This document shows positions 4,151 through 17,421 of a DNA stretch of 64,000 nucleotides, piece after piece. The stretch spans positions 284,924 to 348,923 of the IMG/VR virus record IMGVR_UViG_3300014494_000005; one strand, 5' to 3'. The notes below the pieces were generated by a model, which was not told where the DNA came from, did not search any database, and saw only the letters and a list, made by a program, of their open reading frames with translations. A program made the translations under genes and the position numbers. The number at the start of each line of letters is the position of its first letter. The first letter of the stretch is position 1.

Positions 4151-4290
4151 TTATAAAAAAATTTTTTATAGAATTTTTTATGGTTTTGTTTTTGGTTAAG
4201 TATCTATATATCAGGAATTTTATTAATATTTTTTTAAAATAATTAAATATTTATAGAATTATTTTAACCTATGTGAAGATAGTCGTGTAG

Positions 4291-4363
4291 CACCCCCACC
4301 GTCCAGAGGGGGTGTAAACAGGGGGTTATAGGAGGGGGGGATACGGGGGTATATAGGTAGGGG
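4291..4363 (+). other. G-tract island (G-quadruplex-capable) with CACCCCC/GGGGGTG hairpin
   Basis: G5 4308-12, G5 4321-25, G7 4334-40, G5 4345-49, G4 4360-63 between convergent genes. Confidence 0.8.
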
Positions 4364-4437
4364 TTAGTTTAGACAGGTTCTAAATAGTAAAGTAATTATA
4401 AAAAGAGGGATGAAATTTACACCCCCCTTTAGTTTTC

Positions 4438-4959
4438 TTATACTATTTCGTAAGTAGTGCCACGAACTTTTAGGCGTTTAATGTTTTCGACCGCAATTTC
4501 TCTATGATAAACTGGTTTATCAACACCCTGATATTTGGCAGGGTCAGATTGTGGAAAATACATCTTAATTAGTGCATTTGGAATAAGGTTAAGCACTGAA
4601 TCAAAGTGAAACGACCTAAAAGTTTGTTGTGCCTTATATGTAAGGTAAAACGTTCCTTTTTCAATATGTTTACTTAAAGCTGTGCTAATACGTTTACCTT
4701 TGCCGTTCCATAAAGGTTGGCTTAAAAATTCTCTTTCTTTACCTTCTCTTTCAAGTTCGTTATTAACAGCATTTTCGTATTTATAACCAATCATGCAGCC
4801 AACATTTGCAATTTTAGTAACATTGCCAAAACGCTGTTTACCTTCTTTTGTTAATTTAGGTTCAGTAACATACTGAATTGAAGCAGGTTGCGCACCATAG
4901 CTCCAATTAGCAAGCATTACAATTAACTGATTTACTGTTATTTTTTTAGTTATTCTCAT
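4438..4959 (-). CDS. hypothetical phage protein
   Basis: ORF track; own ECF-type promoter at 4994-5019. Confidence 0.85.
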   Translation of the reverse strand: MRITKKITVNQLIVMLANWSYGAQPASIQYVTEPKLTKEGKQRFGNVTKIANVGCMIGYKYENAVNNELEREGKEREFLSQPLWNGKGKRISTALSKHIEKGTFYLTYKAQQTFRSFHFDSVLNLIPNALIKMYFPQSDPAKYQGVDKPVYHREIAVENIKRLKVRGTTYEIV

Positions 4960-5033
4960 TTTGTTTTATGTTTAATTGGTTTATGAATGAGTATACGTAC
5001 AATGTTGAAAATAGTTACAGTTATTATTTAAAA

Positions 5034-5306
5034 TTAAAAATTATTTGTTTTATTATGTTCAATTAGTTCACTATCTTGTGAACCATTTTTGACCATTAAA
5101 TCAAATTTAATTTTTGCTTTATCGAATGTTTTATATAAACCATTTGAACAAAAAGGGTTTTTAGTAGTTTCGTACACAGCATAAGAAATTCCATTTTTGT
5201 AAGGTTTATTTAATCTTATTAGATTAACAAAACTACCATTTTTGAAATTTGCATATTCAATAAGAGGGCTATTAAATACCCTTCGGGGCAATATTAAGTA
5301 ACTCAT
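5034..5306 (-). CDS. hypothetical protein
   Basis: ORF track; own promoter. Confidence 0.85.
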   Translation of the reverse strand: MSYLILPRRVFNSPLIEYANFKNGSFVNLIRLNKPYKNGISYAVYETTKNPFCSNGLYKTFDKAKIKFDLMVKNGSQDSELIEHNKTNNF

Positions 5307-5401
5307 ATTTTTTTATTATTGGTTTATAATTATAAAGAGTATACGTAAGAAATAAAAAAAGGTTGCAATTTCTCACAACCTTTTTAACATTGTCTTATTG
5401 T

Positions 5402-5920
5402 TTACAGGTATTTATAAAATTCTGAATCTACTTTTATAGTTTCTCTTACTGTTTCCAATTTTTCTTTTAACTCGTGATATTTGTTAAGTTTTGCCTGTTC
5501 TTCATCAAAGTCAAGTACTTTGGTTAAATCTTTGGTTAGGTTATCAAAATCAGTCAAGTTTTTTAGGGTAGTATTATCCATTTCACCCAAGTAAATACTT
5601 TTTTCAAAATACTGGCAGTAATATGTTTTATCTTCATATTTACCACCATTGAAACAAAGTTTAAAATTCAAACAAATTGAATAATTACTTATACTGAAAT
5701 AACAACCCTGATTAGAAGCAAAATCATTATCAGTTAATTTGCAAACATTTGCATTGAAATTAAGAAAATCAATAATAAATTTTGCACTTTTACCGTTCAG
5801 TGTATTGATTTTCTTACCTATGAATTTTTCTAACTGTGGATAGATATGAATTAACTGTTCTAATACTATACGATTTAACTCATTCTTCCCATGTATTTCT
5901 AATTTTAAGTTGGTTTTCAT
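5402..5920 (-). CDS. hypothetical protein
   Basis: ORF track; own promoter and leader. Confidence 0.85.
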   Translation of the reverse strand: MKTNLKLEIHGKNELNRIVLEQLIHIYPQLEKFIGKKINTLNGKSAKFIIDFLNFNANVCKLTDNDFASNQGCYFSISNYSICLNFKLCFNGGKYEDKTYYCQYFEKSIYLGEMDNTTLKNLTDFDNLTKDLTKVLDFDEEQAKLNKYHELKEKLETVRETIKVDSEFYKYL

Positions 5921-5982
5921 TGCTTTATTGTTTTTATTGGTTTATAAAGAGTATACGTACAATATAGAAAATAGTTACAATT

Positions 5983-6180
5983 TTACCTTGAATCAGTGAA
6001 ATAATGACCTTGATTATTATAACCAGAAGATTCACAACCCCTTATGGTTGTTTTTAAATGATAAGAAAGACTGTGACAAAAATGAACAAAATTGTTCCAA
6101 TTTAATTCACATACCGAGTATTGTGGTTCTTTATCCCAATTTATGGCATTTGTACCGACTGTATAGTAATATGTTTTCAT
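5983..6180 (-). CDS. hypothetical protein
   Basis: ORF track; own promoter and leader. Confidence 0.8.
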   Translation of the reverse strand: MKTYYYTVGTNAINWDKEPQYSVCELNWNNFVHFCHSLSYHLKTTIRGCESSGYNNQGHYFTDSR

Positions 6181-6262
6181 TTGCTTTATTGTTTTTGGTT
6201 TATGTATAGTTTAACGTAAGAAATAAAAAAAGGTTACAATTTCTTATAACCTTTTTTACTTA

Positions 6263-6463
6263 TTATCTTTGTTTGAATTTACCGTCATCAATCCAGATAA
6301 TTAAATGGTCATCTGTTGGGACTAACATAATATGATAACCTTTAGATAAGATTATTTCTATAATGATATTACGCATATCAACTGAATAGTCAAATTCTGT
6401 ATTTCTTTCGTATGGCAGGTCATCAAATTTAGTACGCCAATATGATACAATTATTTTTTTCAT
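6263..6463 (-). CDS. hypothetical protein
   Basis: ORF track; own promoter and leader. Confidence 0.8.
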   Translation of the reverse strand: MKKIIVSYWRTKFDDLPYERNTEFDYSVDMRNIIIEIILSKGYHIMLVPTDDHLIIWIDDGKFKQR

Positions 6464-6655
6464 TTTCTTTTTGTTTTTATTGGTTTATGTATGGTTTAAC
6501 GTAAGAAATTAAAAAAGGTTACATTTGCCAGTAAATATAATATTATGGTAAATGTTCTAAAATATATTTATTTTTTGTAACCTTTTTAAATAAAATACGT
6601 TAAATACTATATATTTCACAAAATTTTATTTATTCATTAAAAACCAAAAAGCAAA

Positions 6656-7324
6656 ATGAAAAGAACTAAAAGTGAATTATTGAGTAACACTAAAGACGTA
6701 AAAAACTCAAAGTTTATTGATAACAATACATTAAGTATTGAATATCAAAATGGAATCAAAGCAATACGCTTGCATAATACTGATATTGTCACAATAAAAG
6801 ACAATATGTATATTCTTAATTCTGGTGGCTGGCGTACACCAACAACTAAAGACAGAATTAACAAATATTCACCTGCCAGAATCAGTCAAAACAACGGTCA
6901 ATGGTTTATTAAAGGCTTTTTATTTTACGATGGAATTGAAATTAATCAATCCGGTGACATTGTTTCCAAAAAACTTGAATCTGACAATGATAAAGTTAAT
7001 AAGATGAAAAAGAAAATTTCAGATTATTGTAATCTTGTTACTAAAGAAAATCTGCCTTTACCTTCCTCTGGTGACTGTTGGGATTGTGCATTTATTTCAA
7101 AAGATGGTAAAACAATGGGAGAACTTTCAAATAGCACTCATTTATTAAATCATCTTGACGAAAAGTATTTGCATGGTAGTATTTTAGTTAATGCAATGAG
7201 AGAAACCGGATATAATGACCAGCAAATCGGTTTTCATTACTCAGCAAAATTGTATACTACTTTTAGACGTGCATTAAGAAAGTATTTGCAAAAAAGATTA
7301 ATTGCTAACATAGCAATAAGATAA
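6656..7324 (+). CDS. conserved hypothetical phage protein
   Basis: IRLHNTDIV...LNSGGWRTPTTKDRIN motif recalled from phage proteins. Confidence 0.85.
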   Translation: MKRTKSELLSNTKDVKNSKFIDNNTLSIEYQNGIKAIRLHNTDIVTIKDNMYILNSGGWRTPTTKDRINKYSPARISQNNGQWFIKGFLFYDGIEINQSGDIVSKKLESDNDKVNKMKKKISDYCNLVTKENLPLPSSGDCWDCAFISKDGKTMGELSNSTHLLNHLDEKYLHGSILVNAMRETGYNDQQIGFHYSAKLYTTFRRALRKYLQKRLIANIAIR

Positions 7325-7416
7325 TGTCCAATGTACATAATAAAAGGTTACAATAAAATGTAACCTTTTATATTTTTTTACGTTTAACTATTATAAACCA
7401 ATAAAAACAAAGCAAA

Positions 7417-7629
7417 ATGGAAGTACCTAATATTATTACTGGAATTGACTGGAAGTTATTAAGAAAACAAAAAAGATTATTACTTCAAGTCATAAATAAT
7501 GATAATGTAAATTTTAAAGAAAAGGAAGCATTAGAAGGTATTTTAAATCTTATTGATGCAATACAGGATTATGCTGTTGATGATGCACAAATAGTCACAG
7601 AAATTGAGGTTTTCGGTAAGTTAAAATAA
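7417..7629 (+). CDS. hypothetical protein
   Basis: ORF track; own promoter and leader. Confidence 0.85.
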   Translation: MEVPNIITGIDWKLLRKQKRLLLQVINNDNVNFKEKEALEGILNLIDAIQDYAVDDAQIVTEIEVFGKLK

Positions 7630-7704
7630 TACTAATAAAATCATAATAACTATTTTCGTTCAATGTACGTAAACGAATTATTATAAACCAAAAAACACAA
7701 AGTA

Positions 7705-8271
7705 ATGATAAATTTTGAAACAATTTACAATGAGAACTATAATAATGTATTGAATTACATTAATAGTAAGATTAAAGACAGATTAACAGCCGAAGACCTA
7801 ACTGCAGAAGTGTTTGAAAAAGTGTACAAACATTTAGAAAGTGGTATTTCAGGTGCTTTTAATTCTGAAAAAGCAAAATTCAATACTTGGTTAATGGCAA
7901 TTACTAATAATCATCTTATTGACCATTTTCGCAAAACTGCAAATGATAACCGGGTTCAGAATGTCAGTGATTTTGTTAATGAAGAGGGTGATGAAATATT
8001 TCAATTTGTTGGTAGTAAAGACAGCGAAACCGATTTTGATATTAATGAAATTGAGCTTAAAAACAGACTTGACAAAGCATTTGATTCATTAAAACCTAAA
8101 TACAAAAGGGTTGCTGAATTATATTTCCGTAAGGAAATGAAATACATTGAAATTGCTGAAATGTGCCAGATTCCAATAGGTACGGTTAAAGCTACAATAA
8201 TGAGATGCAGGGAGATGTTACAAGCAGAATTAAAGAGTTTGCACAATGTTCGTAAAGTAGTAATGGCATAA
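7705..8271 (+). CDS. ECF (group IV) RNA polymerase sigma factor
   Basis: region 2 (AEDLTAEVFEKVY...FNTWLMAITNNHLIDHFRK) and region 4.2 HTH (KYIEIAEMCQIPIGTVKATIMR); 188 aa. Confidence 0.95.
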   Translation: MINFETIYNENYNNVLNYINSKIKDRLTAEDLTAEVFEKVYKHLESGISGAFNSEKAKFNTWLMAITNNHLIDHFRKTANDNRVQNVSDFVNEEGDEIFQFVGSKDSETDFDINEIELKNRLDKAFDSLKPKYKRVAELYFRKEMKYIEIAEMCQIPIGTVKATIMRCREMLQAELKSLHNVRKVVMA

Positions 8272-8330
8272 TGTAACCTTTTAGGGTAATGTACGTATAC
8301 TTATTATAAACCAATAAAAACAATAAAGCA

Positions 8331-8513
8331 ATGGAACGTAAAAATTGGATTGTTCGTTATTATGACAAAAAAGATGTTTTAATTAGTTCACATATAATTA
8401 AAGACAGAACCGACCACGAAGCCGAAAATGAAGCAATGGCAGATATGCCAGATAATTGTGATGATTGGTCAATGATTTCAGAAGAAGAAAATAAAAAATT
8501 GAGACCCAAATAA
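8331..8513 (+). CDS. hypothetical protein
   Basis: ORF track; promoter 8272 and leader TAAACCAATAAAAACAATAAAGCAATG. Confidence 0.85.
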   Translation: MERKNWIVRYYDKKDVLISSHIIKDRTDHEAENEAMADMPDNCDDWSMISEEENKKLRPK

Positions 8514-8562
8514 CAATTGTTCAATGTACATAAGTTACAAAACCAAAATAAACAATAAAGCA

Positions 8563-8748
8563 ATGCCAAATAAAAATGTTGTTAACGTATATCAAAAACC
8601 ATTAACCAATGAAGATTTTGAAGGACAAGCAGCTTTGATAAAGAAAGAAGATAATGTACAATCAAAACAACCCGGATATGAATATTGGTATGTACGTTTT
8701 CTTGATGAAGAAGCAAAAGTATTGAGATTAGTTAATATGAATTGTTAA
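8563..8748 (+). CDS. hypothetical protein (start moved to leader-associated ATG)
   Basis: leader AACAATAAAGCAATG ends at the ATG at 8563. Confidence 0.75.
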   Translation: MPNKNVVNVYQKPLTNEDFEGQAALIKKEDNVQSKQPGYEYWYVRFLDEEAKVLRLVNMNC

Positions 8749-8841
8749 ACCGGGTCAATGTACATAATAAAGGGTTGCTAATAATGCAACCTTTTTTAAT
8801 TTACTGCGTATACTCACTATAAACCAATAAACAATAAAGTT

Positions 8842-9087
8842 ATGACGACAAAAACAGCAGTAAGACCTTTGTACGAAATTGCAGAGGAAATCCGTAAAGA
8901 TTGGAAACCTGTAAACTATGCAGCTAAACCATATCTTGAAGCAATGTACAGCTTAAACAAAATTACTGACAATTACATTATGGATACTGGTAAAAGCATT
9001 GTAGCATATTTCCTTTGTAATGCAAGTTCTTGGAGAGGTGACGTTGCCAAACGTGTCAAAGCTGAATTGAATAAAATGATTAAGTAA
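8842..9087 (+). CDS. conserved hypothetical phage protein
   Basis: RPLYEIA.EI..DW...YAAKPYL.AM...WRG..AK.VK.EL pattern. Confidence 0.85.
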   Translation: MTTKTAVRPLYEIAEEIRKDWKPVNYAAKPYLEAMYSLNKITDNYIMDTGKSIVAYFLCNASSWRGDVAKRVKAELNKMIK

Positions 9088-9176
9088 TTAATCGATGTAC
9101 AATAAAAGAGGTTGCTAAATGCAACCTTTTTTATTTTATTGCGTATACTCATTCATAAACCAAAAACACAATTACA

Positions 9177-9665
9177 ATGAAAATAATTAACGGTAATTTT
9201 AAAGAAATTGATTATCCGGTTGGTGACCATATTCAAGAAAATATTCCCATTATTAATAATATGGGTATTAGAATTAAATCTATTTTAATTGAAAAGAAAT
9301 TAGAAAGTGATGACCAAATTAATCTAATTTGTAGTGGTAGTTCTGGTGCTATTATATCTTCAATTATAGCAACAATTCTTTATAAAGATTTTAAAGATGT
9401 TAATATTCGTCATATAAAAAAAGACGGTGAAAGTAGTCATGCAGCAGATAATTATAAATCTCATTTTTATAGTAGTTATTTTAATGGCTTTAATATTATA
9501 GTTGACGATTTTATTTGTAGTGGTGACACAATGAAACGTATCTTTAGTAAAATACGTGACGATATTCAAATTGATATAATTGCTATTAGTAAAATTAATA
9601 ATGGTTGTGAAAAAGTTATTAATTTTTTTAAAGAACAAAAAGTTAAGATATTATTAAGAGATTAA
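9177..9665 (+). CDS. type I phosphoribosyltransferase-fold protein, paralog 1
   Basis: PRPP-binding loop IIVDDFICSGDT; LICSGSSGAII. Confidence 0.8.
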   Translation: MKIINGNFKEIDYPVGDHIQENIPIINNMGIRIKSILIEKKLESDDQINLICSGSSGAIISSIIATILYKDFKDVNIRHIKKDGESSHAADNYKSHFYSSYFNGFNIIVDDFICSGDTMKRIFSKIRDDIQIDIIAISKINNGCEKVINFFKEQKVKILLRD

Positions 9666-9724
9666 TGTAACCTTTCTAACTAAAGTCCGTATACTCATAT
9701 ATAAACCAAAAAAACAATAAAGCA

Positions 9725-10201
9725 ATGAAAACAATACACGCAGATTTTACAACAATAAAATATCCTGTTGGTGACTATATTCAATACAATATTCCAATTA
9801 TTAAGTATATGGGAGATAAAATCAAATTAATTCTAATTGAAAAGAAATTAAATACCGATGCACAAATTAATTTGATTTGTAGTGGTTCATCTGGTGCTAT
9901 TATTGCTTCAATTATTGCAACAATTCTTTATGATAAATTTGAAAAGGTATGTATTCGTTACATAAAAAAAGATGGTGAAAATAGTCATGGATTTAGTTAT
10001 ATGTGTAGTGAATGGTTTAAAGGTTTTAATATTATTGTTGATGATTTTATTACTACTGGTGCAACAATGAAATATATTTTTAATAAAATCAATAATAATA
10101 CTAAAGTTGATTTAATTGCTGTTAGCGAAATTGATTGTGATTGGCTTAATAGTATTAATTATCTTAGAAAAAAGAAAGTTGGAATTTTATTAACTAAATA
10201 G
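9725..10201 (+). CDS. type I phosphoribosyltransferase-fold protein, paralog 2
   Basis: IIVDDFITTGAT; closely similar to preceding ORF. Confidence 0.8.
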   Translation: MKTIHADFTTIKYPVGDYIQYNIPIIKYMGDKIKLILIEKKLNTDAQINLICSGSSGAIIASIIATILYDKFEKVCIRYIKKDGENSHGFSYMCSEWFKGFNIIVDDFITTGATMKYIFNKINNNTKVDLIAVSEIDCDWLNSINYLRKKKVGILLTK

Positions 10202-10257
10202 TAACTTTTTTACTTAATGTCCGTATACTCATTATAAACCAATAAAAACAAAAAGCG

Positions 10258-10611
10258 ATGAATCAAATTAATGAAAAAATTGATTATCAGAAAATCACAA
10301 AGAGTTGCAGAAATCTGAATGTAAAAGAACTTATGCAATTACTTCATATTAACGTTTCGATTTTCTGGTCATGGGGTGCTCATGCCTTCATAGTTGACGA
10401 CAAACGCAATACCAGAATGTTTAGAATGGCTGTGCAAGGAAATCATCATAACGGTCATGTATATATCTTTGTAAATGGTTTGGATTTATTTGATGTTTAT
10501 CTAACCACATTGCAGGGAACTATTAAGGACAAAATTGAAGGATTGTACTTTGACCAATTAGTTGAATGGATTGACGAGAAAATTGAAAAAATTCCTGCTT
10601 ATTCACATTAA
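10258..10611 (+). CDS. conserved hypothetical phage protein
   Basis: ORF track; own promoter and leader. Confidence 0.85.
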   Translation: MNQINEKIDYQKITKSCRNLNVKELMQLLHINVSIFWSWGAHAFIVDDKRNTRMFRMAVQGNHHNGHVYIFVNGLDLFDVYLTTLQGTIKDKIEGLYFDQLVEWIDEKIEKIPAYSH

Positions 10612-10616
10612 GAAAT

Positions 10617-10640
10617 AAGGGACAGATTGTCCCTTTTTTT
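10617..10640 (+). terminator. intrinsic terminator
   Basis: AAGGGACA-gat-TGTCCCTT plus T run. Confidence 0.8.
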
Positions 10641-10701
10641 GTCCCTTATAATGTAACTTTTTTATTTAAAATTCGTATACAATTATATAAAAACAAAAGC
10701 A

Positions 10702-10920
10702 ATGTTAAAACCAATTGACATAGGAACGTTAATAAGAACGCCAGTTAGTGAATTACAAAAACACGTAGTTGAATTATTTCATAATACCGATGAATATAAA
10801 ACCGAAGTTATTATAAATGGTGGTGAGATATTATATTCACCTTGTGGAATGTTCATTTATCTTTATAATGAAAATCTGGATACATTAAATTGGATGTTAG
10901 AACTTGGTATATTAAATTAA
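10702..10920 (+). CDS. hypothetical protein
   Basis: ORF track; own promoter. Confidence 0.8.
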   Translation: MLKPIDIGTLIRTPVSELQKHVVELFHNTDEYKTEVIINGGEILYSPCGMFIYLYNENLDTLNWMLELGILN

Positions 10921-10970
10921 ACTGTAACATTTTTGTATATTGTCCGTATAATAAACTAAAACCAAAAGCA

Positions 10971-11339
10971 ATGGAAAAAATAGAAATTACAATCAGTCAG
11001 GAATTAACTCCGCAAGATATCAATGATATTGTTAGTACAGCATTAGAAGGTGGTATTAATTACTGGTGCGGTGGAGCAATTATTAAAGATGTACCCGCAA
11101 AAGCAGAAGGAAAATATGATTTTGCAAGTGATGTTATTTCAGTTGGTGGAACGCTTGAATTATACGATGCAGAAAGTCCTGACAGATGGGAACTAAATCT
11201 TGAAAAATTATTAAATGGAATTAAAATGCATTGTACAAAAATTGGTAAAACTCCATTAGAACTAATGGATGATTATGATGCCTGTGATGCTGATTGCATT
11301 GTACAATATGCAGTAATGGGAGAAATAGTATTTGGCTAA
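10971..11339 (+). CDS. conserved hypothetical phage protein (start moved to 10971)
   Basis: promoter 10923 and leader AAAGCAATG; DIVSTALEGGINYW...DACDADCIVQYA..GEIVFG. Confidence 0.85.
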   Translation: MEKIEITISQELTPQDINDIVSTALEGGINYWCGGAIIKDVPAKAEGKYDFASDVISVGGTLELYDAESPDRWELNLEKLLNGIKMHCTKIGKTPLELMDDYDACDADCIVQYAVMGEIVFG

Positions 11340-11383
11340 AAATATAATCATTAGTTTTGTTTCATTGTCTTTATATTGGTTTG

Positions 11384-11424
11384 CCCCTGTGCTTCATTTA
11401 ACCAGAATGACACAGGGGTTTTTT
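11384..11424. terminator. terminator between convergent genes
   Basis: CCCCTGTG...CACAGGGG plus T run. Confidence 0.75.
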
Positions 11425-11752
11425 ATGCTTCATATTTTAAGATATAATTTTGTATTTCGTGGTTACTTAAATGTACAGTTTTTTGTTTGTGTTTACTGTC
11501 ATTAATAATTGTAATGATAAATTCGTTCTTCAATGTACTATAAGTAATTTTTAGTATCCTATCATACCAAAAATTAAAGTTTTCGATATTGTACTTAATA
11601 TCTAAAACTGTGCTAATCATAGTTTTTAGTTCGTTCATCATAGTATAGTGTTTGTTCATTACATAATTACTACATTTCGTCACAAATTCCAAATAAAAGT
11701 AGATGATAGAAATCATCATTTTATATGTTTCTTTAGCTATAATAATGTACAA
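11423..11752 (-). CDS. hypothetical protein inserted against block orientation (start uncertain)
   Basis: ORF track. Confidence 0.6.
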   Translation of the reverse strand: MYIIIAKETYKMMISIIYFYLEFVTKCSNYVMNKHYTMMNELKTMISTVLDIKYNIENFNFWYDRILKITYSTLKNEFIITIINDSKHKQKTVHLSNHEIQNYILKYEA

Positions 11753-11824
11753 GTTTTATTTAAAATAACGTAACCTTTTTAATTAAAAACCGTATATACT
11801 AATGTACTAAAAATAAAACATATT

Positions 11825-12133
11825 ATGGAAAATCTAAATGAAAAACAACAATTAATTTCTTTATGTTATAAAGAAGTTAAACCAAATAATTTTGTTAAAA
11901 CAATTGGTTTTCATTTACTTCATTATAATATGGAAACTAAAAAATGGAGTAATTATTTTTTAGGTAAAAATGACCAAATTTGTATATGGCAGACTGTTAA
12001 ATATGAACAAACAGAATTTAGTACTTTATCTGCATTTCTTAGATACACAGAATGTTTTACAAAAACTACATTTTATAATACAGATACAGATTTTTCTATT
12101 TTAACACTTCTTGAAGTTTTTTCTAATATGTAA
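11825..12133 (+). CDS. hypothetical protein
   Basis: ORF track; own promoter. Confidence 0.8.
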   Translation: MENLNEKQQLISLCYKEVKPNNFVKTIGFHLLHYNMETKKWSNYFLGKNDQICIWQTVKYEQTEFSTLSAFLRYTECFTKTTFYNTDTDFSILTLLEVFSNM

Positions 12134-12193
12134 ATTGTAACCTTTTTAAATAAAATCCGTATTATCTACATAAACCAATAAAAACAGAAAGCA

Positions 12194-12754
12194 ATGGAAG
12201 CAGTTAAAACAATTCAGTACAAAAATCACATTATTAATATCATTCCAGATGAATTTTATAATAGTGATACTATGCTTGGCGAAGATGAAGAAGTATTTTT
12301 GCTTTATTATCACAGGGACTTCTACATTAAAAAAGATGGTTTTCCTGAACCTAAATCAAATGAAGATATTAAAGCATTGAAAAAAGATTATTTCTTATTT
12401 ATTGTCTATGCTTATATTCATTCAGGCGTTTCATTATCACTTGGCAATGATACATATCCTTTCAATGACCAGTGGGACGTTTCAAATTGTGGTTATGTTT
12501 TAATTAAAAAAGATTCTGGTATTGATAAACCCAGAGAAGCAGCACAATCATTGATTGATGAATATAATGATGTATTGTCCGGCAATGTTTATGGTTATCA
12601 AGTTACTTTTAATGATGAAGTAACTGATAGCTGTTGGGGTTTTGTTGGTGATATTGACAAGTCTGGCATTATTGATGAAGCAAAAGGAATTATTGATTAT
12701 AATGTTGAACACAATAAGGAAAAATTTGCTGAACAATTGACATTGGAATTATAA
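12194..12754 (+). CDS. conserved hypothetical phage protein
   Basis: YAYIHSGVSLS...WD...G..YGY...DSCWGFVG pattern. Confidence 0.85.
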   Translation: MEAVKTIQYKNHIINIIPDEFYNSDTMLGEDEEVFLLYYHRDFYIKKDGFPEPKSNEDIKALKKDYFLFIVYAYIHSGVSLSLGNDTYPFNDQWDVSNCGYVLIKKDSGIDKPREAAQSLIDEYNDVLSGNVYGYQVTFNDEVTDSCWGFVGDIDKSGIIDEAKGIIDYNVEHNKEKFAEQLTLEL

Positions 12755-12853
12755 AACAACATTGTTCAATGTACATAAAAGAGGTTGCTATAATGCAACC
12801 TTTTTAATTAAAATCCGTATACTATTATTATAAACCAAATAAAACAAAACAAA

Positions 12854-13192
12854 ATGGAAAAGATAATAACTAATAAAATTTTGACAATAAAGGCATACAT
12901 AGCATTTGCTGAATTTGTTGCAAAACCTGAAAATCTAAATTCATTAATAACCAAATTGGAATTAATTGAAAAAGAAATTAAACGAGGTAAAAATACCGAT
13001 AAAGGTTTATGGTTTAGATTTTTTAAAGGTGATACTGCAGCCACAACAATTGATAATTTGAAAGATACATTTGAAATCGAAACGCCAATGTACATAAGTA
13101 GTACTTCAACAGCCAAAAAAAATAAAGAATATATGATTGAAAATATTTGTATTGCTTTAAATGAAGTATCTTTACAATTATATTATTCATAA
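12854..13192 (+). CDS. hypothetical protein
   Basis: ORF track; own promoter. Confidence 0.8.
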   Translation: MEKIITNKILTIKAYIAFAEFVAKPENLNSLITKLELIEKEIKRGKNTDKGLWFRFFKGDTAATTIDNLKDTFEIETPMYISSTSTAKKNKEYMIENICIALNEVSLQLYYS

Positions 13193-13269
13193 ATCGTAAC
13201 TATTTTAAATAAAATCCGTATACTCATTATAATTAAGTTACAAGTATAAACCAATAAAAACAAAAAGCA

Positions 13270-13803
13270 ATGGGACAATATTACAAACCAGTGAATTTAG
13301 ACAAAAAGAAATTTGTTTATTCACACGACTACGGAAACGGTCTTAAATTAATGGAACATTCTTGGATTGACAATGATTTTGTTGCAATAGTTGAAAACCT
13401 TATTAAAAAAGGTGGCGACTGGTACGGCAATAGAATTGTTTGGGCAGGTGACTACGCTGAAAATGAACCAAAAAGAGAACACAATCTTTATCACATTGTT
13501 GGTGAAAATAAAATCACTCCCAATACAAAAAGAAATCCAAAACTCCGGTATTTAAAAAACTTAGATACAAAAGAATTTGTCAATCTCAGCAAAGTACCTG
13601 TAAGTGACGTTTATAACAATTTTAAATTCAGGATTCACCCTCTACCATTATTAACTTGTGAAGGTAACGGACAAGGTGGTGGCGATTACTTTGGCGAAGA
13701 TAAAAACAAATTGATTGGAAAATGGGCAAGAAACAGGGTTACAATACAATCACATAAACCCAAAGATGGAATTGAAATTGTTTTTGATTTGATTGAAAAA
13801 TAA
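13270..13803 (+). CDS. conserved hypothetical phage protein
   Basis: MGQYYKPVNLD...GLKLMEH...RIVWAGDYA pattern. Confidence 0.85.
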   Translation: MGQYYKPVNLDKKKFVYSHDYGNGLKLMEHSWIDNDFVAIVENLIKKGGDWYGNRIVWAGDYAENEPKREHNLYHIVGENKITPNTKRNPKLRYLKNLDTKEFVNLSKVPVSDVYNNFKFRIHPLPLLTCEGNGQGGGDYFGEDKNKLIGKWARNRVTIQSHKPKDGIEIVFDLIEK

Positions 13804-13931
13804 TCATTGTTCAATGTACATAAAAAGAGGTTGCTAATAATGCAACCTTTTTTATTTAAAATATATTCGTATATTTGTAACTATTTTATTTAAGATTCGT
13901 ATATACTAATATAAACTAAATAATAAAAATC

Positions 13932-14828
13932 ATGAGCAGACGAGTTAAAAAAACCAAAGTAGGTGCAACAGTTTGTACCATTGGCGACCTTCAATTTGAT
14001 GTTGAAATTCGCAACGAAACAATGACATGTAATAAAGAATATAGCCGTAAGGTTATAGGACAAATTAATGGCAGTGATTTTCTTTTAAATCAGTGTTCAG
14101 ACATTTACACCTTGGTGAAAAATACTGACATATTCCCAAACATTGAAAAGGTGTTAAATGATAATAATATCAAATTCAGTGTAACATATTCTCACATTAA
14201 CAACGTCAGATTTTATGCTGACTATATCATTGAAGACCAACGTTATTCTTATCACATGAATGGCACAACCGATTATGTTAAACCAATGTTAAGAGTTCAA
14301 CATTCTTACAATGGATTAACTAAATACAGAATTGTTTTCGGTTATTACCGCCTTGTTTGTACCAATGGAGCTACTATTCCAGTAGAACAAATGAAAAATT
14401 TCAATCTTTGTATTGTTGGAAAACATACTTTATCAATTGAACGTAGCTTTAATGAACTTGATAAAATGTTGAAGAACTTTGCTGTCAATGCAAAACAGAT
14501 AACCGAAGAAATAACTGCAAAGTACGAGTTACTTGGTGGTCGTATGGTTACCAAACTTGAAGACCGGGTAAAAGAAGTATTGAACGCTGTTAAAATACCA
14601 ATAGTTGATAATTCAAAGTTTAGTACATTGAATTACATTATAGGTAAAGCAAAAAATGAAGCAGATGACAGCGTTGGAAATCTTGGCTATCATGGAGTAG
14701 TAAACGATTTTCTTGTGTATAATGCAATTAATCAATACTTAAATGATAATAGTCGTAATATTGCCGTTCCTGAAAAACGTATGGAAACAGATTCAAAAGT
14801 ATTTGAATATATGCTTGAAAATGCTTAA
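13932..14828 (+). CDS. DUF932-like protein
   Basis: PMLRVQHSYNG...FGYYRLVCTNG signature (recalled). Confidence 0.7.
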   Translation: MSRRVKKTKVGATVCTIGDLQFDVEIRNETMTCNKEYSRKVIGQINGSDFLLNQCSDIYTLVKNTDIFPNIEKVLNDNNIKFSVTYSHINNVRFYADYIIEDQRYSYHMNGTTDYVKPMLRVQHSYNGLTKYRIVFGYYRLVCTNGATIPVEQMKNFNLCIVGKHTLSIERSFNELDKMLKNFAVNAKQITEEITAKYELLGGRMVTKLEDRVKEVLNAVKIPIVDNSKFSTLNYIIGKAKNEADDSVGNLGYHGVVNDFLVYNAINQYLNDNSRNIAVPEKRMETDSKVFEYMLENA

Positions 14829-14904
14829 GCAATGTACAAAAAAAAATGACCTTGTATTGTAACAAATGCAGGGTTTTTTCGTATAATAATTATAAAACAA
14901 AATA

Positions 14905-15078
14905 ATGGATAAAGAACTTGATGCACTTATGTTTGCAGTAAATGAGAAAGCAAATAAATCGAATGAAATTATGAATCAAAGTACTAGTGACATTGAAGAA
15001 TATAATTTTCATAAAGGTCAGTTTCAAGCATATTCAGAAGTTTACACTATGCTCGATAATATTAGGCAATCTTTGTAA
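14905..15078 (+). CDS. small hypothetical protein (57 aa, below ORF-track cutoff)
   Basis: MDKELDALMFAVNEK...NIRQSL after promoter 14858. Confidence 0.7.
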   Translation: MDKELDALMFAVNEKANKSNEIMNQSTSDIEEYNFHKGQFQAYSEVYTMLDNIRQSL

Positions 15079-15132
15079 CATATTGTCCAGAATTTCGTAT
15101 AATTATTATAAACCAATTAAAAAAATAAAGCT

Positions 15133-15390
15133 ATGTTACTACAAACCGAAGACAATAAAAAAATGTACTTAGTTCAATTAACCGATTTTAATGGAAATGA
15201 AATTGGATTGTACTTAGTTCCTGAGAATGTACCGCAAACTCAATTTGAAGAAGAAATTGAAAAGTATGGTGACCAAAGTGAATTTGATGAAAACAACGAA
15301 TTGGGTGTTGTAAGAGTTTTCGCAGAAGAAAGTATTTTGAGTGTTGTAAGAATTTTCGCAGAAGAAAGTATTGTTGATGTTGATTTTTAA
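15133..15390 (+). CDS. hypothetical protein with 36-bp internal duplication
   Basis: 15301-15336 and 15337-15372 (LGVVRVFAEESI / LSVVRIFAEESI). Confidence 0.8.
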   Translation: MLLQTEDNKKMYLVQLTDFNGNEIGLYLVPENVPQTQFEEEIEKYGDQSEFDENNELGVVRVFAEESILSVVRIFAEESIVDVDF

Positions 15391-15402
15391 AACATAAAGC
15401 AA

Positions 15403-15674
15403 ATGAAAAAAGGTTTTAAAATAGGTGACAAAGTATATTGGAGACTAATGATGGTAATATTATAAGCAGATGGTCAAGTAATAGAGACGATGGTAAAGAT
15501 ACTGTCTTTCTTGAACTTAATTTAAAACGAGAATTTAAAATTGATAGTATATTATTATTTCTTGGTAACTATAAACAAACGTATAATCTGTATATATCAT
15601 CTGCAGATACAAGCAATATGATATTAATAGGTAGTGAAAAACATACTCCAATTCCTGTGTATATAAAACATTAA
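15403..15674 (+). pseudogene. probable frameshifted gene
   Basis: ATG 15403 gives MKKGFKIGDKVYW; the long frame (ETNDGNII...) continues one base out of register. Confidence 0.45.
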
Positions 15675-15680
15675 AAAACA

Positions 15681-16019
15681 ATGGATGATATTAATGATTT
15701 TCTTGAAAACGAAAAAAATAATTTAGCTTCCAGTATTCAAAAATTTCTTGACTACAAATATAGAGACACAGTAAAAAAAGAAATTGGTGATAGAATTAAT
15801 GTAGTTGATTTTTCAAGTGTAACTCATGTAAACGGTGATGAACTTGAACCCGAAGAATATGATACAGATGATAATATACAAACATTTATGGTTATCGAAA
15901 CTAATCAAAAATATCAATTCCGGTCTTGTCATAAAACATATTCTCAAAACTTAATTATTGTTAATCTTAAAGATAAAAAACAATATAGAGTTAATTCTAG
16001 TCATGTAAAACTATTATGA
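15681..16019 (+). CDS. hypothetical protein
   Basis: ORF track. Confidence 0.8.
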   Translation: MDDINDFLENEKNNLASSIQKFLDYKYRDTVKKEIGDRINVVDFSSVTHVNGDELEPEEYDTDDNIQTFMVIETNQKYQFRSCHKTYSQNLIIVNLKDKKQYRVNSSHVKLL

Positions 16020-16020
16020 T

Positions 16021-16341
16021 ATGAACAAAAGAAATGCTATTATAGGTATCAAAGATATCATTAAGAAATATGGTGAAACTACCTCAATATATCTTAAGCT
16101 CAAAATTGAAGATAAACCTTGCTTAAGTTTAATTGTTAAAGGTAAAGAAATAAAATGTATATTTGTCGAATTGTATAATAAAGATAGTGTTACTGCTATT
16201 ACCAATATTAATGGTTATTTTAAAGAAAGTAATATTATTCCTTATGAAAATATTCCTGAACCAATATTAAATCAAATACTGAAACTATTAAAACATTACG
16301 AAAAAAGAAAAGTAGGAAATAAATACTTTGATATTTTGTAA
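16021..16341 (+). CDS. hypothetical protein
   Basis: ORF track. Confidence 0.75.
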   Translation: MNKRNAIIGIKDIIKKYGETTSIYLKLKIEDKPCLSLIVKGKEIKCIFVELYNKDSVTAITNINGYFKESNIIPYENIPEPILNQILKLLKHYEKRKVGNKYFDIL

Positions 16342-16388
16342 CATTTTTAATTAAAATCCGTATAATCATATATAACATTTAAATAACT

Positions 16389-16461
16389 GATAGTTGTAAC
16401 TGGAAACAGGGACCGAGTAGACCGAAGAGTGCACTGAACTCAGATGTTAGAATCGTTCTAA
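16389..16461 (+). ncRNA. candidate small RNA, family copy A
   Basis: no ORF after promoter 16337; GTTG-hairpin(CTG-GAAA-CAG)-GAGTAGAC-N23-GTTAGAATCGTTCTAA. Confidence 0.6.
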
Positions 16462-16508
16462 ATAATAATTGTCGAAAATGTTTAATATGTAGACAATTAA
16501 AGAAATAA

Positions 16509-16769
16509 TTATATATTTTTTCTAATATTTATATGATTTAATACTTCTATTAATAAAGGATGTTTATAATTTATAATATATGGTTTATCTCGTAAATAAT
16601 TAACATCAACTATTGGTGCACCATATTCATTATCAGTTTCAAATGGAATGTTTTCTTTTTTTAATAACTCAATATATCCCTTTTGTTGTTCAAGTAATGC
16701 TAATTCTAATTCATTTCCAATTTTAACTAAATCTGCATAATAATCAAAATCAATACTATATTGTTTCAT
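16509..16769 (-). CDS. hypothetical protein
   Basis: ORF track. Confidence 0.7.
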   Translation of the reverse strand: MKQYSIDFDYYADLVKIGNELELALLEQQKGYIELLKKENIPFETDNEYGAPIVDVNYLRDKPYIINYKHPLLIEVLNHINIRKNI

Positions 16770-16911
16770 ATTTTTATATTTTAAGTAAAGATAAATACTT
16801 TAAATATAAAATCCTATTCTTTTTTCTTTTTATTTTATTCTATTTGCATTGTACTATATATTGTGTAGTAATATGAAAATATTTACTATTTTTGTATTAA
16901 AATAATAATGT

Positions 16912-17421
16912 ATGAGTATTGAAAATAAAAATGAAAAGCGTAGACAATATTATGCTAAAAATAAAGAAAAAATAATTAAACAAGGAAAACAATGGCGTAT
17001 TAATAATAAAGAAAAGGTTAAAAATAATAAAAGACGATATTATTTAAAAAATAGAGAAAAAATTAAACAACAATGGATTGATAATAAAGAAATTCATAAA
17101 GAATATTATCTTAAATATTGGGACAGATATAAACAATATCGTATTGATAATAAAAAGAAAATAAAAGAAAGTGCAGTAAATAGAATTTATAAAATAACAC
17201 CAGAAAAACAAAACGAATTATATGTTAAACAAAATGGTTGTTGTGCTATATGTGGTATACCAGAAGATAAATTAAACTATTTTTTATCTATTGACCATAA
17301 TCATAAAACTAAAAAAGTAAGAGGATTGTTATGTCATACTTGTAATAGAGGCATTGGATTACTTAAAGATAATATTAATATATTACAAAAAGCAATTGAT
17401 TATATAAAAAATAGTAAATAA
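16912..17421 (+). CDS. endonuclease VII-like HNH nuclease (homing-type)
   Basis: QNGCCAICG...IDHNH...VRGLLCHTCNRGIG; K/Y-rich repeat N-terminus. Confidence 0.9.
   Translation: MSIENKNEKRRQYYAKNKEKIIKQGKQWRINNKEKVKNNKRRYYLKNREKIKQQWIDNKEIHKEYYLKYWDRYKQYRIDNKKKIKESAVNRIYKITPEKQNELYVKQNGCCAICGIPEDKLNYFLSIDHNHKTKKVRGLLCHTCNRGIGLLKDNINILQKAIDYIKNSK

What the first reader, a model, noticed from the sequence alone, without database searches (positions are those of the whole stretch)
7341..13852. Terminator and -35 element fused into one repeated shuffling unit
Seen: at 7343-68, 8770-96, 9108-31, 12779-805 and 13826-52 (also 5356-85 and 6228-56 on -), a hairpin AAAAGGTT(G/A)C-loop-G(C/T)AACCTTTT terminates the upstream gene and its right arm is the next -35 (at 13826 a second, properly spaced promoter follows). 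A shared leader TAAACCAATAAAAACAATAAAGCAATG comes after. Known: PeSL elements of T4-type phages mediate modular gene shuffling. Inference: recombination between these units could excise, duplicate or reorder genes, and the tandem PRTases look like a product.
Basis: partly seen in the sequence, partly recalled or inferred. Interest (0 to 1): 0.6.

Follow-up and report, generated by a model that had tools for sequence, protein, structure and literature searches.

The report
Phage promoter-terminator cassettes that shuffle genes
A giant T4-like phage puts nearly every small gene in one 10-kb region behind the same compact promoter cassette, some copies doubling as the previous gene's terminator, and relatives show genes swapped at these cassettes, a variant of the known PeSL system of T4-type phages.

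Summary
Seven stable hairpins lie at the stated coordinates. In six of them the right arm (G[T/C]AACC plus a T-run) sits exactly 16 nt upstream of a CGTATA/CGTTAA box. The seventh (13826) is mis-spaced at 21 nt.

The "-35" is not sigma-70-like. tGTAAC(c)TTTT-N16-CGTAta is a textbook ECF-sigma promoter, and an ECF sigma gene (7705-8271) lies inside the cluster. About 22 such promoters, each followed by a shared A-rich leader without a Shine-Dalgarno sequence, drive about 25 small genes in window 4400-15400.

The record is a 349-kb T4-like jumbo phage (Gp23 capsid, RIIA/RIIB). About 15 related genomes have the same promoter type, and 10 loci (the window plus nine related ones) have the same hairpin/-35 fusion. 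G.U pairs show the hairpin is selected in the sense RNA, which fits a terminator.

Gene order is not fixed. A few anchor genes stay collinear while the small genes between them are replaced, reordered or moved. Two clean indels have their crossovers inside the cassettes, and the cassette between the two PRTase paralogs looks chimeric.

This is a PeSL-like hyperplastic region built on a phage ECF-sigma promoter, a new variant of a known kind.

The parts
7343..7368 (+). Fused terminator hairpin; right arm GTAACC is the -35 of the promoter of gene 7417
   Evidence: Fold -14.6 kcal/mol, z -6.0. AAC-N16-CGTTTAAC.
8770..8796 (+). Fused terminator hairpin; right arm GCAACC is the -35 of the promoter of gene 8842
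   Evidence: Fold -12.5 kcal/mol. Terminator scan hit. N16 to CGTATAC.
9108..9131 (+). Fused terminator hairpin; right arm is the -35 of the promoter of PRTase 1
   Evidence: Fold -18.4 kcal/mol, z -6.6. N16 to CGTATAC.
12779..12805 (+). Fused terminator hairpin; right arm is the -35 of the promoter of gene 12854
   Evidence: Fold -14.9 kcal/mol. N16 to CGTATAC.
13826..13852 (+). Terminator hairpin with an orphan -35-like right arm, 21 nt from CGTATAT. Likely remnant of the promoter of a small RNA that relatives carry here.
   Evidence: Fold -15.2 kcal/mol. Spacing counted. Relatives have hairpin-promoter, small RNA, promoter, then DUF932.
5356..5385 (-). Fused terminator hairpin (contains a U.G pair); right arm is the -35 of the promoter of gene 5034-5306
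6228..6256 (-). Fused terminator hairpin (contains a U.G pair); right arm is the -35 of the promoter of gene 5983-6180
14848..14875 (+). Second kind of fusion: the -35 GTAAC lies in the loop or left arm of the hairpin and the T-run lies just before the -10 (promoter 14859-14885)
   Evidence: Terminator scan, 11 pairs. Same design in relative G004 and in L083.
6577..6603 (+). ECF-type promoter of gene 6656; -10 variant CGTTAA
7360..7386 (+). ECF-type promoter of gene 7417; -10 variant CGTTTA
7646..7673 (+). Weak ECF-like promoter of the sigma gene itself: ATAAC-N17-CGTAAA. Possible autoregulation.
   Evidence: comparison with cassette 5018.
8273..8299 (+). ECF-type promoter of gene 8331, no hairpin. 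The upstream stop codon abuts the -35.
8786..8812 (+). ECF-type promoter of gene 8842
9121..9147 (+). ECF-type promoter of PRTase 1
9667..9693 (+). ECF-type promoter of PRTase 2. The cassette appears chimeric: its -10 side resembles cassette 10201 and its leader resembles cassette 9121.
10201..10227 (+). ECF-type promoter of gene 10258
10653..10679 (+). ECF-type promoter of gene 10702, preceded by a separate conventional terminator
10924..10950 (+). ECF-type promoter of gene 10962/10971
11770..11796 (+). ECF-type promoter of gene 11825
12137..12163 (+). ECF-type promoter of gene 12194; -10 CGTATT
12795..12821 (+). ECF-type promoter of gene 12854
13196..13222 (+). ECF-type promoter of gene 13270
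13877..13903 (+). ECF-type promoter of the DUF932 gene; this is the properly spaced second promoter
15075..15101 (+). ECF-type promoter of gene 15133; generic flavour GTAACA...CGTATAAT
4992..5018 (-). ECF-type promoter of gene 4438-4959. Homology with L083 ends at its -35 edge.
5340..5366 (-). ECF-type promoter of gene 5034-5306
5952..5978 (-). ECF-type promoter of gene 5402-5920
6211..6237 (-). ECF-type promoter of gene 5983-6180
6496..6522 (-). ECF-type promoter of gene 6263-6463. With promoter 6577 it forms the divergent hub; the two -35 boxes are an inverted repeat 54 nt apart.
8307..8333 (+). Example of the shared A-rich leader ending in the start codon. There is no Shine-Dalgarno sequence.
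   Evidence: Only 7 of 349 ORFs genome-wide have an SD-like word.
7705..8271 (+). Phage ECF-type sigma factor, the likely reader of the cassette promoters
   Evidence: Pfam Sigma70_r2 (43 bits), r4_2 (35 bits) and Sigma70_ECF (23 bits), all above cut-off. Homologues sit next to the same promoters in relatives.
9177..9665 (+). PRTase-like paralogue 1
   Evidence: 60% identical to paralogue 2. Weak Pribosyltran match below cut-off.
9725..10201 (+). PRTase-like paralogue 2. The tandem repeat unit is promoter plus leader plus ORF, about 546 nt.
   Evidence: 75% nt identity between 9118-9729 and 9664-10262.
13813..14837 (+). DUF932 module (hairpin, two promoters, leader, ORF 13932-14828). It is absent from this site in relative L083 and bounded by direct repeats AATGTACA(T/A)AAAA at 13813 and 14831.
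10617..10635 (+). Conventional terminator, not fused, followed by a separate promoter
11383..11419 (+). Strong conventional terminator between convergent genes
   Evidence: Fold -20.2 kcal/mol.

Best explanation
Window 4400-15400 is a hyperplastic small-gene region of a 349-kb T4-like jumbo phage. Almost every small gene in it is its own transcription unit.

Each unit starts with one compact cassette. It holds an ECF-sigma-type promoter (tGTAAC(c)TTTT, 16 nt, CGTAta) and a conserved A-rich leader without a Shine-Dalgarno sequence. The promoter is most likely read by host core RNA polymerase carrying the phage ECF sigma encoded at 7705-8271.

The ECF -35 region already consists of a G/C-containing word followed by a T-tract. 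An inverted copy placed just upstream is therefore enough to turn it into the 3' arm and U-tract of an intrinsic terminator. In seven units the same roughly 11 bases end the upstream transcript as RNA, and in six of those they also recruit sigma for the next gene as DNA.

The cassettes are kept alike by function, so they are also dispersed repeats, with exact runs of up to 27 nt. The phage's homologous recombination can cross over in them. Such crossovers delete, insert, duplicate or move promoter-plus-gene modules without breaking regulation, as described for PeSLs of T4-type phages.

Shown here: the motifs, the folds, the sigma gene, conservation across the clade, variable gene order, and crossovers inside cassettes. 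Inferred: which sigma reads the promoter, actual termination, and the recombination mechanism.
For: Promoter class:
- AAC-N16-CGT with a -35-proximal T-tract in 20-22 cassettes. This matches the ECF class as described in PMC5758882 (AAC in the -35, CGT/CGTA in the -10, T-tract, spacers of 14-17).
- The same motif occurs about 45 times genome-wide with invariant 16-nt spacing. It occurs in relatives with zero hits for the reversed control pattern.
- An ECF sigma lies inside the cluster, and homologues lie beside the same promoters in the relatives.

Terminator:
- Stable hairpins followed by T-runs.
- 30 of 294 predicted promoters, in 10 loci (the window and nine relatives), carry the right-arm fusion.
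- 12 of the 30 pair the T of GTAAC with G, and there are 33 G.U pairs in all. These pair only in the sense RNA.

T4-like identity: Gp23 capsid at 213 bits and RIIA/RIIB.

Shuffling:
- Anchor genes stay collinear, but the small-gene families change order and side of DUF932 among relatives.
- The DUF932 module is flanked by direct repeats in the window and is missing from that site in L083, where one hybrid repeat remains.
- A 98-aa ORF is inserted inside a cassette in L066 compared with L067.
- The cassette between the two PRTases appears chimeric.
- The same gene family (F45) sits behind different cassette types in the window and in L083.
- Sequence identity is mosaic: sigma 51% against DUF932 82% and g13270 86% in L083.
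Against: - There are no expression data, so promoter use, the identity of the reading sigma and termination are all unproven. The genome encodes a second ECF-type sigma, and there are at least two or three -10 flavours.
- If the sigma gene depends on its own promoter class, it is unclear how transcription starts.
- The only near-identical genome (99.985% over 20.5 kb) is fully collinear, so no recent event has been caught.
- Intergenic breakpoints are expected in any case, because only such recombinants survive.
- The clean window crossover maps to AATGTAC, a motif of unknown role, not to the promoter or the hairpin.
- The relatives are metagenome assemblies.
Confidence: 0.7

Rival explanations
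1. The cassettes are purely regulatory. The differences in gene order arise by illegitimate recombination or moron-like accretion. Selection keeps only events whose ends fall between genes, so the cassettes mark the breakpoints but do not cause them.
For: The cassette elements, including the AT-rich spacer TTTTAATTAAAA, are conserved across relatives with only 47-57% RIIA identity. Their similarity is therefore explained by function. Intergenic space in this region consists almost wholly of cassettes, so any viable breakpoint would fall in one.
Against: The DUF932 indel is bounded by direct repeats, and one hybrid copy is left at the empty site. The L066 insertion begins and ends inside cassette sequence. 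The PRTase middle cassette looks chimeric. Exact shared runs of 15-27 nt occur in 53 of 210 cassette pairs. T4-type recombination needs only short homology patches, as stated in PMC2839356.
Confidence: 0.2
2. The inverted repeats act at the DNA level. They could be an operator for a dimeric regulator that covers the -35, a cruciform, or a pair of back-to-back -35 boxes for bidirectional promoters, rather than RNA terminators.
For: The repeat is a near-perfect palindrome whose left arm reads as a -35 box on the other strand. At the hub (6513-6586) two -35 boxes really are inverted and serve divergent promoters.
Against: No CGT box lies 16-17 nt downstream of the left arm on the opposite strand (read). 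33 G.U pairs, 12 of them at the T of GTAAC, would be A.C mismatches on the other strand and mismatches in a DNA palindrome. Every hairpin is followed by a T-run and lies just after a stop codon.
Confidence: 0.04
3. The hairpin units are small mobile elements, such as MITEs or IS200/IS605-type palindromic elements mobilised by the TnpB-type genes in the window, or attC-like integron sites. On this view they have spread through the region by themselves.
For: There are multiple copies with conserved flanks and a hairpin. Two OrfB_IS605/TnpB genes lie at 52068 and 54604.
Against: The copies are confined to one 10-kb region of a 349-kb genome. They are always co-oriented with the genes, and the right arm is always at a fixed 16 nt from a -10 box. 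No Y1 transposase or integrase was found among the roughly 29 window proteins scanned with Pfam. The same design sits at equivalent positions in distant relatives. Unlike integron cassettes, these carry their own promoters.
Confidence: 0.03
4. The apparent rearrangements are artefacts of metagenome assembly: chimeras formed across the repeated cassettes or between co-occurring related phages.
For: All relatives are metagenome or IMG/VR contigs. The cassettes are repeats.
Against: Exact repeats are at most 27 nt, shorter than the final k-mers of the usual assemblers (my own knowledge). The window's arrangement is reproduced in a second record at 99.985% identity. L065 and L066, which carry different record prefixes, agree at 99.9%. 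The differences include unrelated ORFs, not only changes in order.
Confidence: 0.03

Closest known systems
PeSL (promoter-early stem-loop) cassettes of T4-type phages (RB49/phi1, T4/PST, KVP40/nt-1; PMC2839356, PMC4122927)
   Same: Both are composite intergenic units of about 60-100 bp, with stop codon, AT-rich stretch, promoter, stem-loop terminator, leader and start codon. Both are dense in hyperplastic regions full of small genes of unknown function in a T4-like genome. In both, the stem-loops take several positions, including overlapping the -35 box or lying between -35 and -10; both kinds are seen here. In both, indels and replacements between relatives are bounded by the units.
   Different: The promoter here is ECF-sigma type (AAC-N16-CGT with a T-tract) rather than sigma-70 early type, and it goes with a phage-encoded ECF sigma in the same region. 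There is no Shine-Dalgarno sequence but a conserved A-rich leader. The stems are GGTT(G/A)C/G(C/T)AACC rather than GGGG/CCCC. An extra strand-specific motif, AATGTAC, accompanies the units. The phage is a 349-kb environmental jumbo phage. Mini-circles were not tested.
ECF sigma promoters of bacteria, for example Bacillus subtilis SigW/SigX/SigM/SigV (PMC5758882)
   Same: AAC in the -35, CGT(A) in the -10, a 16-17 nt spacer and a homopolymeric T-tract just downstream of the -35. The sigma gene lies in its own regulon's region and has a weaker copy of the motif upstream.
   Different: The sigma is phage-encoded. There are dozens of near-consensus promoters packed into 10 kb. No anti-sigma factor was identified. 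The T-tract also serves as the terminator's U-tract.
Phage-encoded sigma factors that redirect host polymerase, for example phiEco32 and 7-11 (PMC4331800) or SPO1
   Same: A phage sigma with its own promoter motif defines a class of phage genes.
   Different: phiEco32 promoters have a single element, TAATGTATA. Here the promoter has two parts and is ECF-type. The resemblance of TAATGTATA to the local AATGTAC(A/G)TA motif is a lead only.
Morons of lambdoid phages
   Same: Single genes that bring their own promoter and terminator.
   Different: Morons have no conserved flanking cassette (discussion in PMC2839356). Here the flanks are a conserved repeat family.

Membership tests
PeSL cassettes of T4-type phages | Host genome is a T4-type phage | tested here: met
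   Gp23 major capsid family at 213 bits, with zero hits in 14 control genomes. RIIA and RIIB are present.
PeSL cassettes of T4-type phages | Units lie between small, mostly unknown genes in a region that varies between relatives (a hyperplastic region) | tested here: met
   Of the 26 ORFs called between 4438 and 15390, 10 have a family shared with another locus. Order and content vary among about 15 relatives.
PeSL cassettes of T4-type phages | Promoter part is a sigma-70-like early promoter | tested here: not met
   The motif is AAC-N16-CGT, the ECF class. The sigma-70 scan is not enriched: 105 sites against 97.9 +/- 12.4 expected.
PeSL cassettes of T4-type phages | A stable stem-loop is associated with the promoter, at variable positions that include overlapping the -35 | tested here: met
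   Seven right-arm fusions and one loop-type fusion in the window. Thirty right-arm fusions in the clade. The positions match subclasses listed in PMC2839356.
PeSL cassettes of T4-type phages | Shine-Dalgarno sequence and start codon at the 3' end | tested here: not met
   The start codon is present, but there is no SD. Only 7 of 349 ORFs have an SD-like word, fewer than in a control window. A conserved A-rich leader takes its place.
PeSL cassettes of T4-type phages | Insertions, deletions and replacements between related phages are bounded by the units | tested here: met
   DUF932 module, window against L083. ORF insertion, L066 against L067. General pattern.
PeSL cassettes of T4-type phages | Recombination between neighbouring units yields mini-circles | not testable with these tools
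No reads were laid.
PeSL cassettes of T4-type phages | Promoter and terminator activity shown by reporter assays | not testable with these tools
   This needs an experiment.
ECF-sigma-dependent promoters | AAC in the -35, CGT in the -10, spacer 14-17 nt, optional T-tract | tested here: met
   Consensus TGTAACctTTTT...CGTATA with a 16-nt spacer in 20 of 20 aligned cassettes. Literature definition.
ECF-sigma-dependent promoters | A cognate ECF sigma is encoded | tested here: met
   The 188-aa protein has r2, r4_2 and ECF models above cut-off. A second one lies elsewhere in the genome.
ECF-sigma-dependent promoters | Initiation depends on that sigma | not testable with these tools
   This needs in vitro transcription or expression data.
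Intrinsic (Rho-independent) terminators | G/C-containing stem, short loop, followed by a U-tract, downstream of a stop codon | tested here: met
   The sense-strand-only G.U pairs support an RNA-level structure.
Integron attC sites / IS200-IS605-type palindromic elements | Dedicated integrase or Y1 transposase, promoterless cassettes or target-site signature, dispersal in the genome | tested here: not met
   No such enzyme was found among the roughly 29 window proteins scanned with Pfam. The cassettes carry promoters. The copies are confined to one 10-kb bin. Not every small ORF was scanned.

The most novel reading that the evidence does not exclude
This clade of T4-like jumbo phages runs a dedicated gene-cassette platform rather than relying on passive homology. 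Two phage ECF sigmas with different -10 flavours would time the expression of the modules. The strand-specific word (C/T)AATGTAC(A/G) marks module boundaries and holds the one clean crossover found in the window. It would be the target of a specific nuclease, recombinase or RNA-processing enzyme, so that modules are cut out and re-inserted in the transcribed orientation, much like an integron but with promoter-bearing cassettes.
Probability: 0.1. Interest if true: 0.8.

Novelty: new variant of a known kind. Interest (0 to 1): 0.5.

Why it matters
PeSLs have so far been described in T4-like phages of Proteobacteria, with sigma-70 early promoters. Here the same genome-plasticity design turns up in an uncultured 349-kb T4-like phage clade that has swapped the promoter for an ECF-sigma type with its own sigma factor. 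This suggests that composite promoter/terminator linkers are a general solution for hyperplastic regions and do not depend on the promoter class.

It also gives a clear example of dual coding: about 11 bases serve both as the terminator's 3' arm plus U-tract and as the ECF -35 plus T-tract. It provides a ready set of roughly 300 natural promoter variants for a phage ECF sigma, which are potential orthogonal expression parts.

The value is limited because the principle is already published and nothing here has been tested experimentally.

Tried and rejected
- **Reads test.** Junctions, mini-circles and transcript ends remain untested.
- **blastn against cultured or deposited phages.** The region gave no match.
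- **Near-identical relative.** IMG/VR record 3300050009_000051 is 99.985% identical and collinear. Its three differences lie at 16820-16831, outside the cassettes, so it is uninformative.
- **Closest relative by RIIA.** G001 (79% RIIA identity) is a 66%-complete fragment. It has no DUF932 match and only a borderline sigma match (24% identity), so it could not be used to compare this region.
- **Exact-pattern scans of viral contigs.** Scans for the promoter and for the -10-plus-leader returned single hits, none closely related on a protein check, apart from the same phage.
- **Rfam and tRNA scans.** Neither found anything in the region.
- **Sigma-70 reading of the promoter.** Rejected. TTGTAA to TATAAT would be 19 nt apart, and the sigma-70 scan shows no enrichment.
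- **Bacteroidota -33/-7 type promoter.** Rejected from my own knowledge of that consensus: there is no TAnnTTTG.
- **Antisense promoter from the left arm.** Rejected: no -10 box at the right distance.
- **AATGTACATAA as a decayed -10 or a second promoter.** Left open. There is no consistent -35 upstream, and a start there would still transcribe the hairpin.
- **Statistics on distance of homology-block ends to cassettes.** Not pursued, because nearly all intergenic space is cassette, so the test cannot discriminate.

Full report
**What the window is.** The window is the last 64 kb of a 348,923-bp virus record with 26% G+C. The genome encodes a T4 Gp23-type major capsid protein (213 bits; no hits in 14 control bacterial genomes) and RIIA and RIIB. 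It is therefore a distant T4-like jumbo phage. Only 7 of 349 ORFs have a Shine-Dalgarno-like word before the start codon, fewer than in a control window. From general knowledge this suggests a Bacteroidota-type host. The nearest sigma relatives among deposited phages are in crAss-like phages, at about 30% identity. The host assignment is inference.

**Checking the observation.**
- They fold at -12.5 to -18.4 kcal/mol, with z-scores of -4.0 to -6.6.
- Each begins about 15-25 nt after a stop codon and is followed by a T-run. Terminator-like sites in 4000-17000 number 15 against 3.1 +/- 1.3 in shuffles.
- The word G[T/C]AACCTTTT is enriched: 37 matches against 14.3 +/- 3.8. Thirteen of the 15 exact genomic copies lie in one 10-kb bin of the 349-kb genome.
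- Aligning the 110 nt upstream of every start codon in 4400-15400 shows that nearly all of the roughly 25 small genes on both strands have the same cassette. The consensus is tGTAAC(c)TTTT, 16 nt, then CGTATAC or CGTT(A/T)AAC, then about 5 nt, then ATAAACCAATAAAAACAA..GCA and ATG.
- The hairpin is an optional addition, present in 7 of about 22 cassettes.
- In six of the seven, the right arm is exactly 16 nt from the -10 box. At 13842 the distance is 21 nt, so that arm is not a usable -35. The working promoter there is the next one, at 13877.

**What kind of promoter it is.** AAC, 16 nt, CGT(A), with a T-tract right after the AAC, is the signature of ECF-sigma promoters. PMC5758882 describes AAC in the -35, CGT/CGTA in the -10, a -35 consensus of tGAAACnTTTt, and spacers of 14-17 nt.
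- ORF 7705-8271, inside the cluster, matches Sigma70_r2, Sigma70_r4_2 and Sigma70_ECF above their cut-offs.
- A loose scan finds the motif about 45 times in the genome, with 16-nt spacing in all but a few weak or doubtful hits.
- There are flavours. GTAACA...CGTATAAT occurs all over the genome. GTAACC...CGTATAC with the long shared leader occurs only in window 5000-13900. GTAACC...ACGTTAAAC occurs at the genes next to the divergent hub at 6513-6586.
- The sigma gene has a weaker copy of the motif upstream (ATAAC, 17 nt, CGTAAA).
- A second ECF-type sigma lies at genome position 62.5-63.2 kb.
- Which sigma reads which flavour, and how the first sigma is made, cannot be decided from sequence.

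**Why terminator and -35 can share bases.** The ECF -35 region is a G/C-containing word followed by a T-tract. An inverted copy upstream completes an intrinsic terminator. This is dual use, not coincidence.
- Among 294 predicted promoters in 15 non-redundant loci (the window plus 14 related loci), 30 have this right-arm fusion, spread over 10 of those loci.
- In 12 of the 30 the T of GTAAC pairs with a G in the left arm, and there are 33 G.U pairs in all. Such pairs hold only in the sense-strand RNA.
- This argues for an RNA structure (a terminator) and against a DNA palindrome, operator or cruciform.
- A second design occurs at window 14848-14875, throughout relative G004 and in L083: the -35 sits in the loop or left arm, and the T-run sits just before the -10.
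- At one orthologous site the terminator is fused in the window (9108) but separate in L083, so the designs interconvert.
- Elsewhere in the window, conventional unfused terminators precede separate promoters (10617-10635) or stand between convergent genes (11383-11419).

**Relatives and gene order.**
- RIIA, the sigma and the DUF932 protein (13932-14828) recovered relatives from viral and metagenome contigs.
- All of them carry the same promoter class, densely packed around a sigma homologue.
- Protein families were clustered across 19 loci, the window plus 18 related ones, two pairs of which duplicate each other. The skeleton stays largely collinear: a divergent gene, sigma, F3 (window 8842), DUF932, F4/F11, F9 (window 17480), F18.
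- The small genes between the anchors are replaced or reordered. F6, F10, F12, F13, F16, F17 and F19 each lie before DUF932 in some genomes and after it in others. F7 and F8 swap order. F21 (window 4438) occupies three different contexts.

**Breakpoints.** The best comparator is L083 (record Ga0265323_10000098; DUF932 82%, g13270 86%, g4438 84% amino-acid identity, but sigma only 51%, which is mosaic).
- In L083 the homologue of gene 13270 is followed directly by the homologue of window 14831-14895. The roughly 1.0-kb DUF932 module of the window is missing from that site.
- In the window the module is bounded by direct repeats AATGTACA(T/A)AAAA at 13813 and 14831. L083 keeps one copy, with window-13740-type sequence to its left and window-14840-type sequence to its right.
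- In L083 the DUF932 gene, together with an upstream small RNA, lies in the other arm of the divergent region, next to the g4438 homologue, inverted so that it is still co-oriented with local transcription.
- All the other relatives in which both genes were recovered keep DUF932 in the sigma arm, so the L083 state is probably the derived one. Excision between direct cassette repeats, followed by re-entry by homology into an inverted cassette, would give exactly this result. That step is inference.
- A second clean case is in other clade members. L066 has a 98-aa ORF inserted between the leader and the start codon of a cassette that is intact in L067. The insert ends in a partial cassette: spacer and leader, with no -35 or -10.
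- The F45 gene (window 14905) has a loop-type cassette in the window but a cluster-type cassette in L083, with the switch in the leader.
- Homology blocks between the window and L083 generally begin 15-30 nt before a start codon and end at a stop codon, at AATGTAC or at a -35 edge.

**The PRTase pair.** The two PRTase-like proteins are 60% identical; their Pfam matches are below cut-off. The DNA repeat unit is promoter plus leader plus ORF, about 546 nt at 75% identity. The cassette between them resembles the downstream cassette around the -10 (GTCCGTATACTCAT) and the upstream one in the leader (ACCAAAAA). That is what unequal crossing-over inside the cassette would leave. It rests on few informative positions, and the duplication is old.

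**Substrate for recombination.** Cassettes share exact runs of up to 27 nt, and 53 of 210 pairs share at least 15 nt. PMC2839356 notes that T4-type recombination needs only short patches of homology. It reports PeSL crossovers between the -10 and the start codon, in the loop, or in the AT-rich part.

**Comparison with what is known.** PeSLs (PMC2839356, PMC4122927) are the closest known system.
- Same: a T4-like genome, a hyperplastic region, composite promoter-terminator-leader units, stem-loops in several positions including overlapping the -35, and indels bounded by the units.
- Different: an ECF-type promoter instead of a sigma-70-type one, a phage ECF sigma in the region, no Shine-Dalgarno sequence, different stems, and the extra AATGTAC word.
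- On strict membership, two defining features (a sigma-70-like early promoter and an SD) were tested and not met. I therefore file this as a variant that works like a PeSL, not as a PeSL in the published sense.

**Caveats.**
- The only near-identical genome is collinear.
- All relatives are assemblies. However, exact repeats are at most 27 nt, and separately recorded contigs agree.
- That the cassettes cause the recombination, rather than merely marking the viable breakpoints, remains inference.

**Verdict.**
- This is a new variant of a known kind.
- Interest is moderate.

Noticed in passing
window 7330, 7662, 8288, 8523, 8757, 12768, 13813, 14831 and 23 more between 5000 and 25000; all related loci: The heptamer (C/T)AATGTAC(A/G) is strongly strand-specific and co-oriented with transcription: 31:2 in window 1-25000, and 29:0, 20:0 and 18:0 in three relatives. 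It is 4-9 times enriched beside the ECF-type promoters and has no conserved flanks. It lies 5' of most of the fused hairpins and holds the crossover of the DUF932 indel. Its function is unknown. It resembles the phiEco32 sigma promoter TAATGTATA (PMC4331800).
   Followed up: partly
L083:6640-6760 (+), L054:14535-14650, L053 about 5850-5950 (-), L055 about 19340-19450, L067 about 5990-6100; absent at window 13852-13877: A conserved small RNA-like element, a stem of GGCAGGG/CCCTGCC type around GGGTGCGGTAATCC, has its own ECF-type promoter and sits directly upstream of DUF932 in at least 10 relatives. It matches no Rfam family. In the window it is missing, and its mis-spaced promoter remnant abuts the DUF932 promoter. 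That explains the tandem promoters at 13826-13903.
   Followed up: partly
G000:C1:62539-63189 (-), which is L084:539-1189: A second ECF-type sigma factor (216 aa; Sigma70_r2 at 49 bits) lies far from the window. The two sigmas may read different -10 flavours (CGTATAC, CGTATAAT, CGTTAAAC).
   Followed up: partly
window 52068-53216 and 54604-55845 (+): Two TnpB-type genes (OrfB_IS605 plus Cas12f1-like TNB domains) lie in the phage genome.
   Followed up: no
window 16912-17421 and 22833-23210 (+); promoters at 16336, 21482, 23213: Two paralogous proteins carry a C-terminal endonuclease VII domain. Three almost identical generic promoters (TTGTAACATTTTTAATTAAAATCCGTATAAT) are each followed by long stretches without an obvious ORF, for example 16366-16911. 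These may be non-coding RNAs or intron-like elements. There was no Rfam hit.
   Followed up: no
window 6513-6586: This is the divergent hub of the region. Two -35 boxes in inverted orientation, 54 nt apart, serve the minus-strand block (6463 down to 4438) and the plus-strand block (6656 onward). The promoters next to the hub use the -10 variant ACGTTAAAC, in L083 as well.
   Followed up: partly
window 8271, 9665, 10201, 12133, 13192: In hairpin-less cassettes the stop codon of the upstream gene abuts or overlaps the -35 box (for example TAA-TGTAAC or TAGTAAC). These genes have no terminator of their own.
   Followed up: no
window 17480-18307 (+): A conserved anchor gene matches Pfam GP88 (123 bits). 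Window 6656-7324 matches Kyano_Gp96, a family of T4-like cyanophages.
   Followed up: no
window 16820-16831: The only three differences from the near-identical record 3300050009_000051 over 20.5 kb are T/A changes clustered within 12 nt of a T-rich stretch.
   Followed up: no
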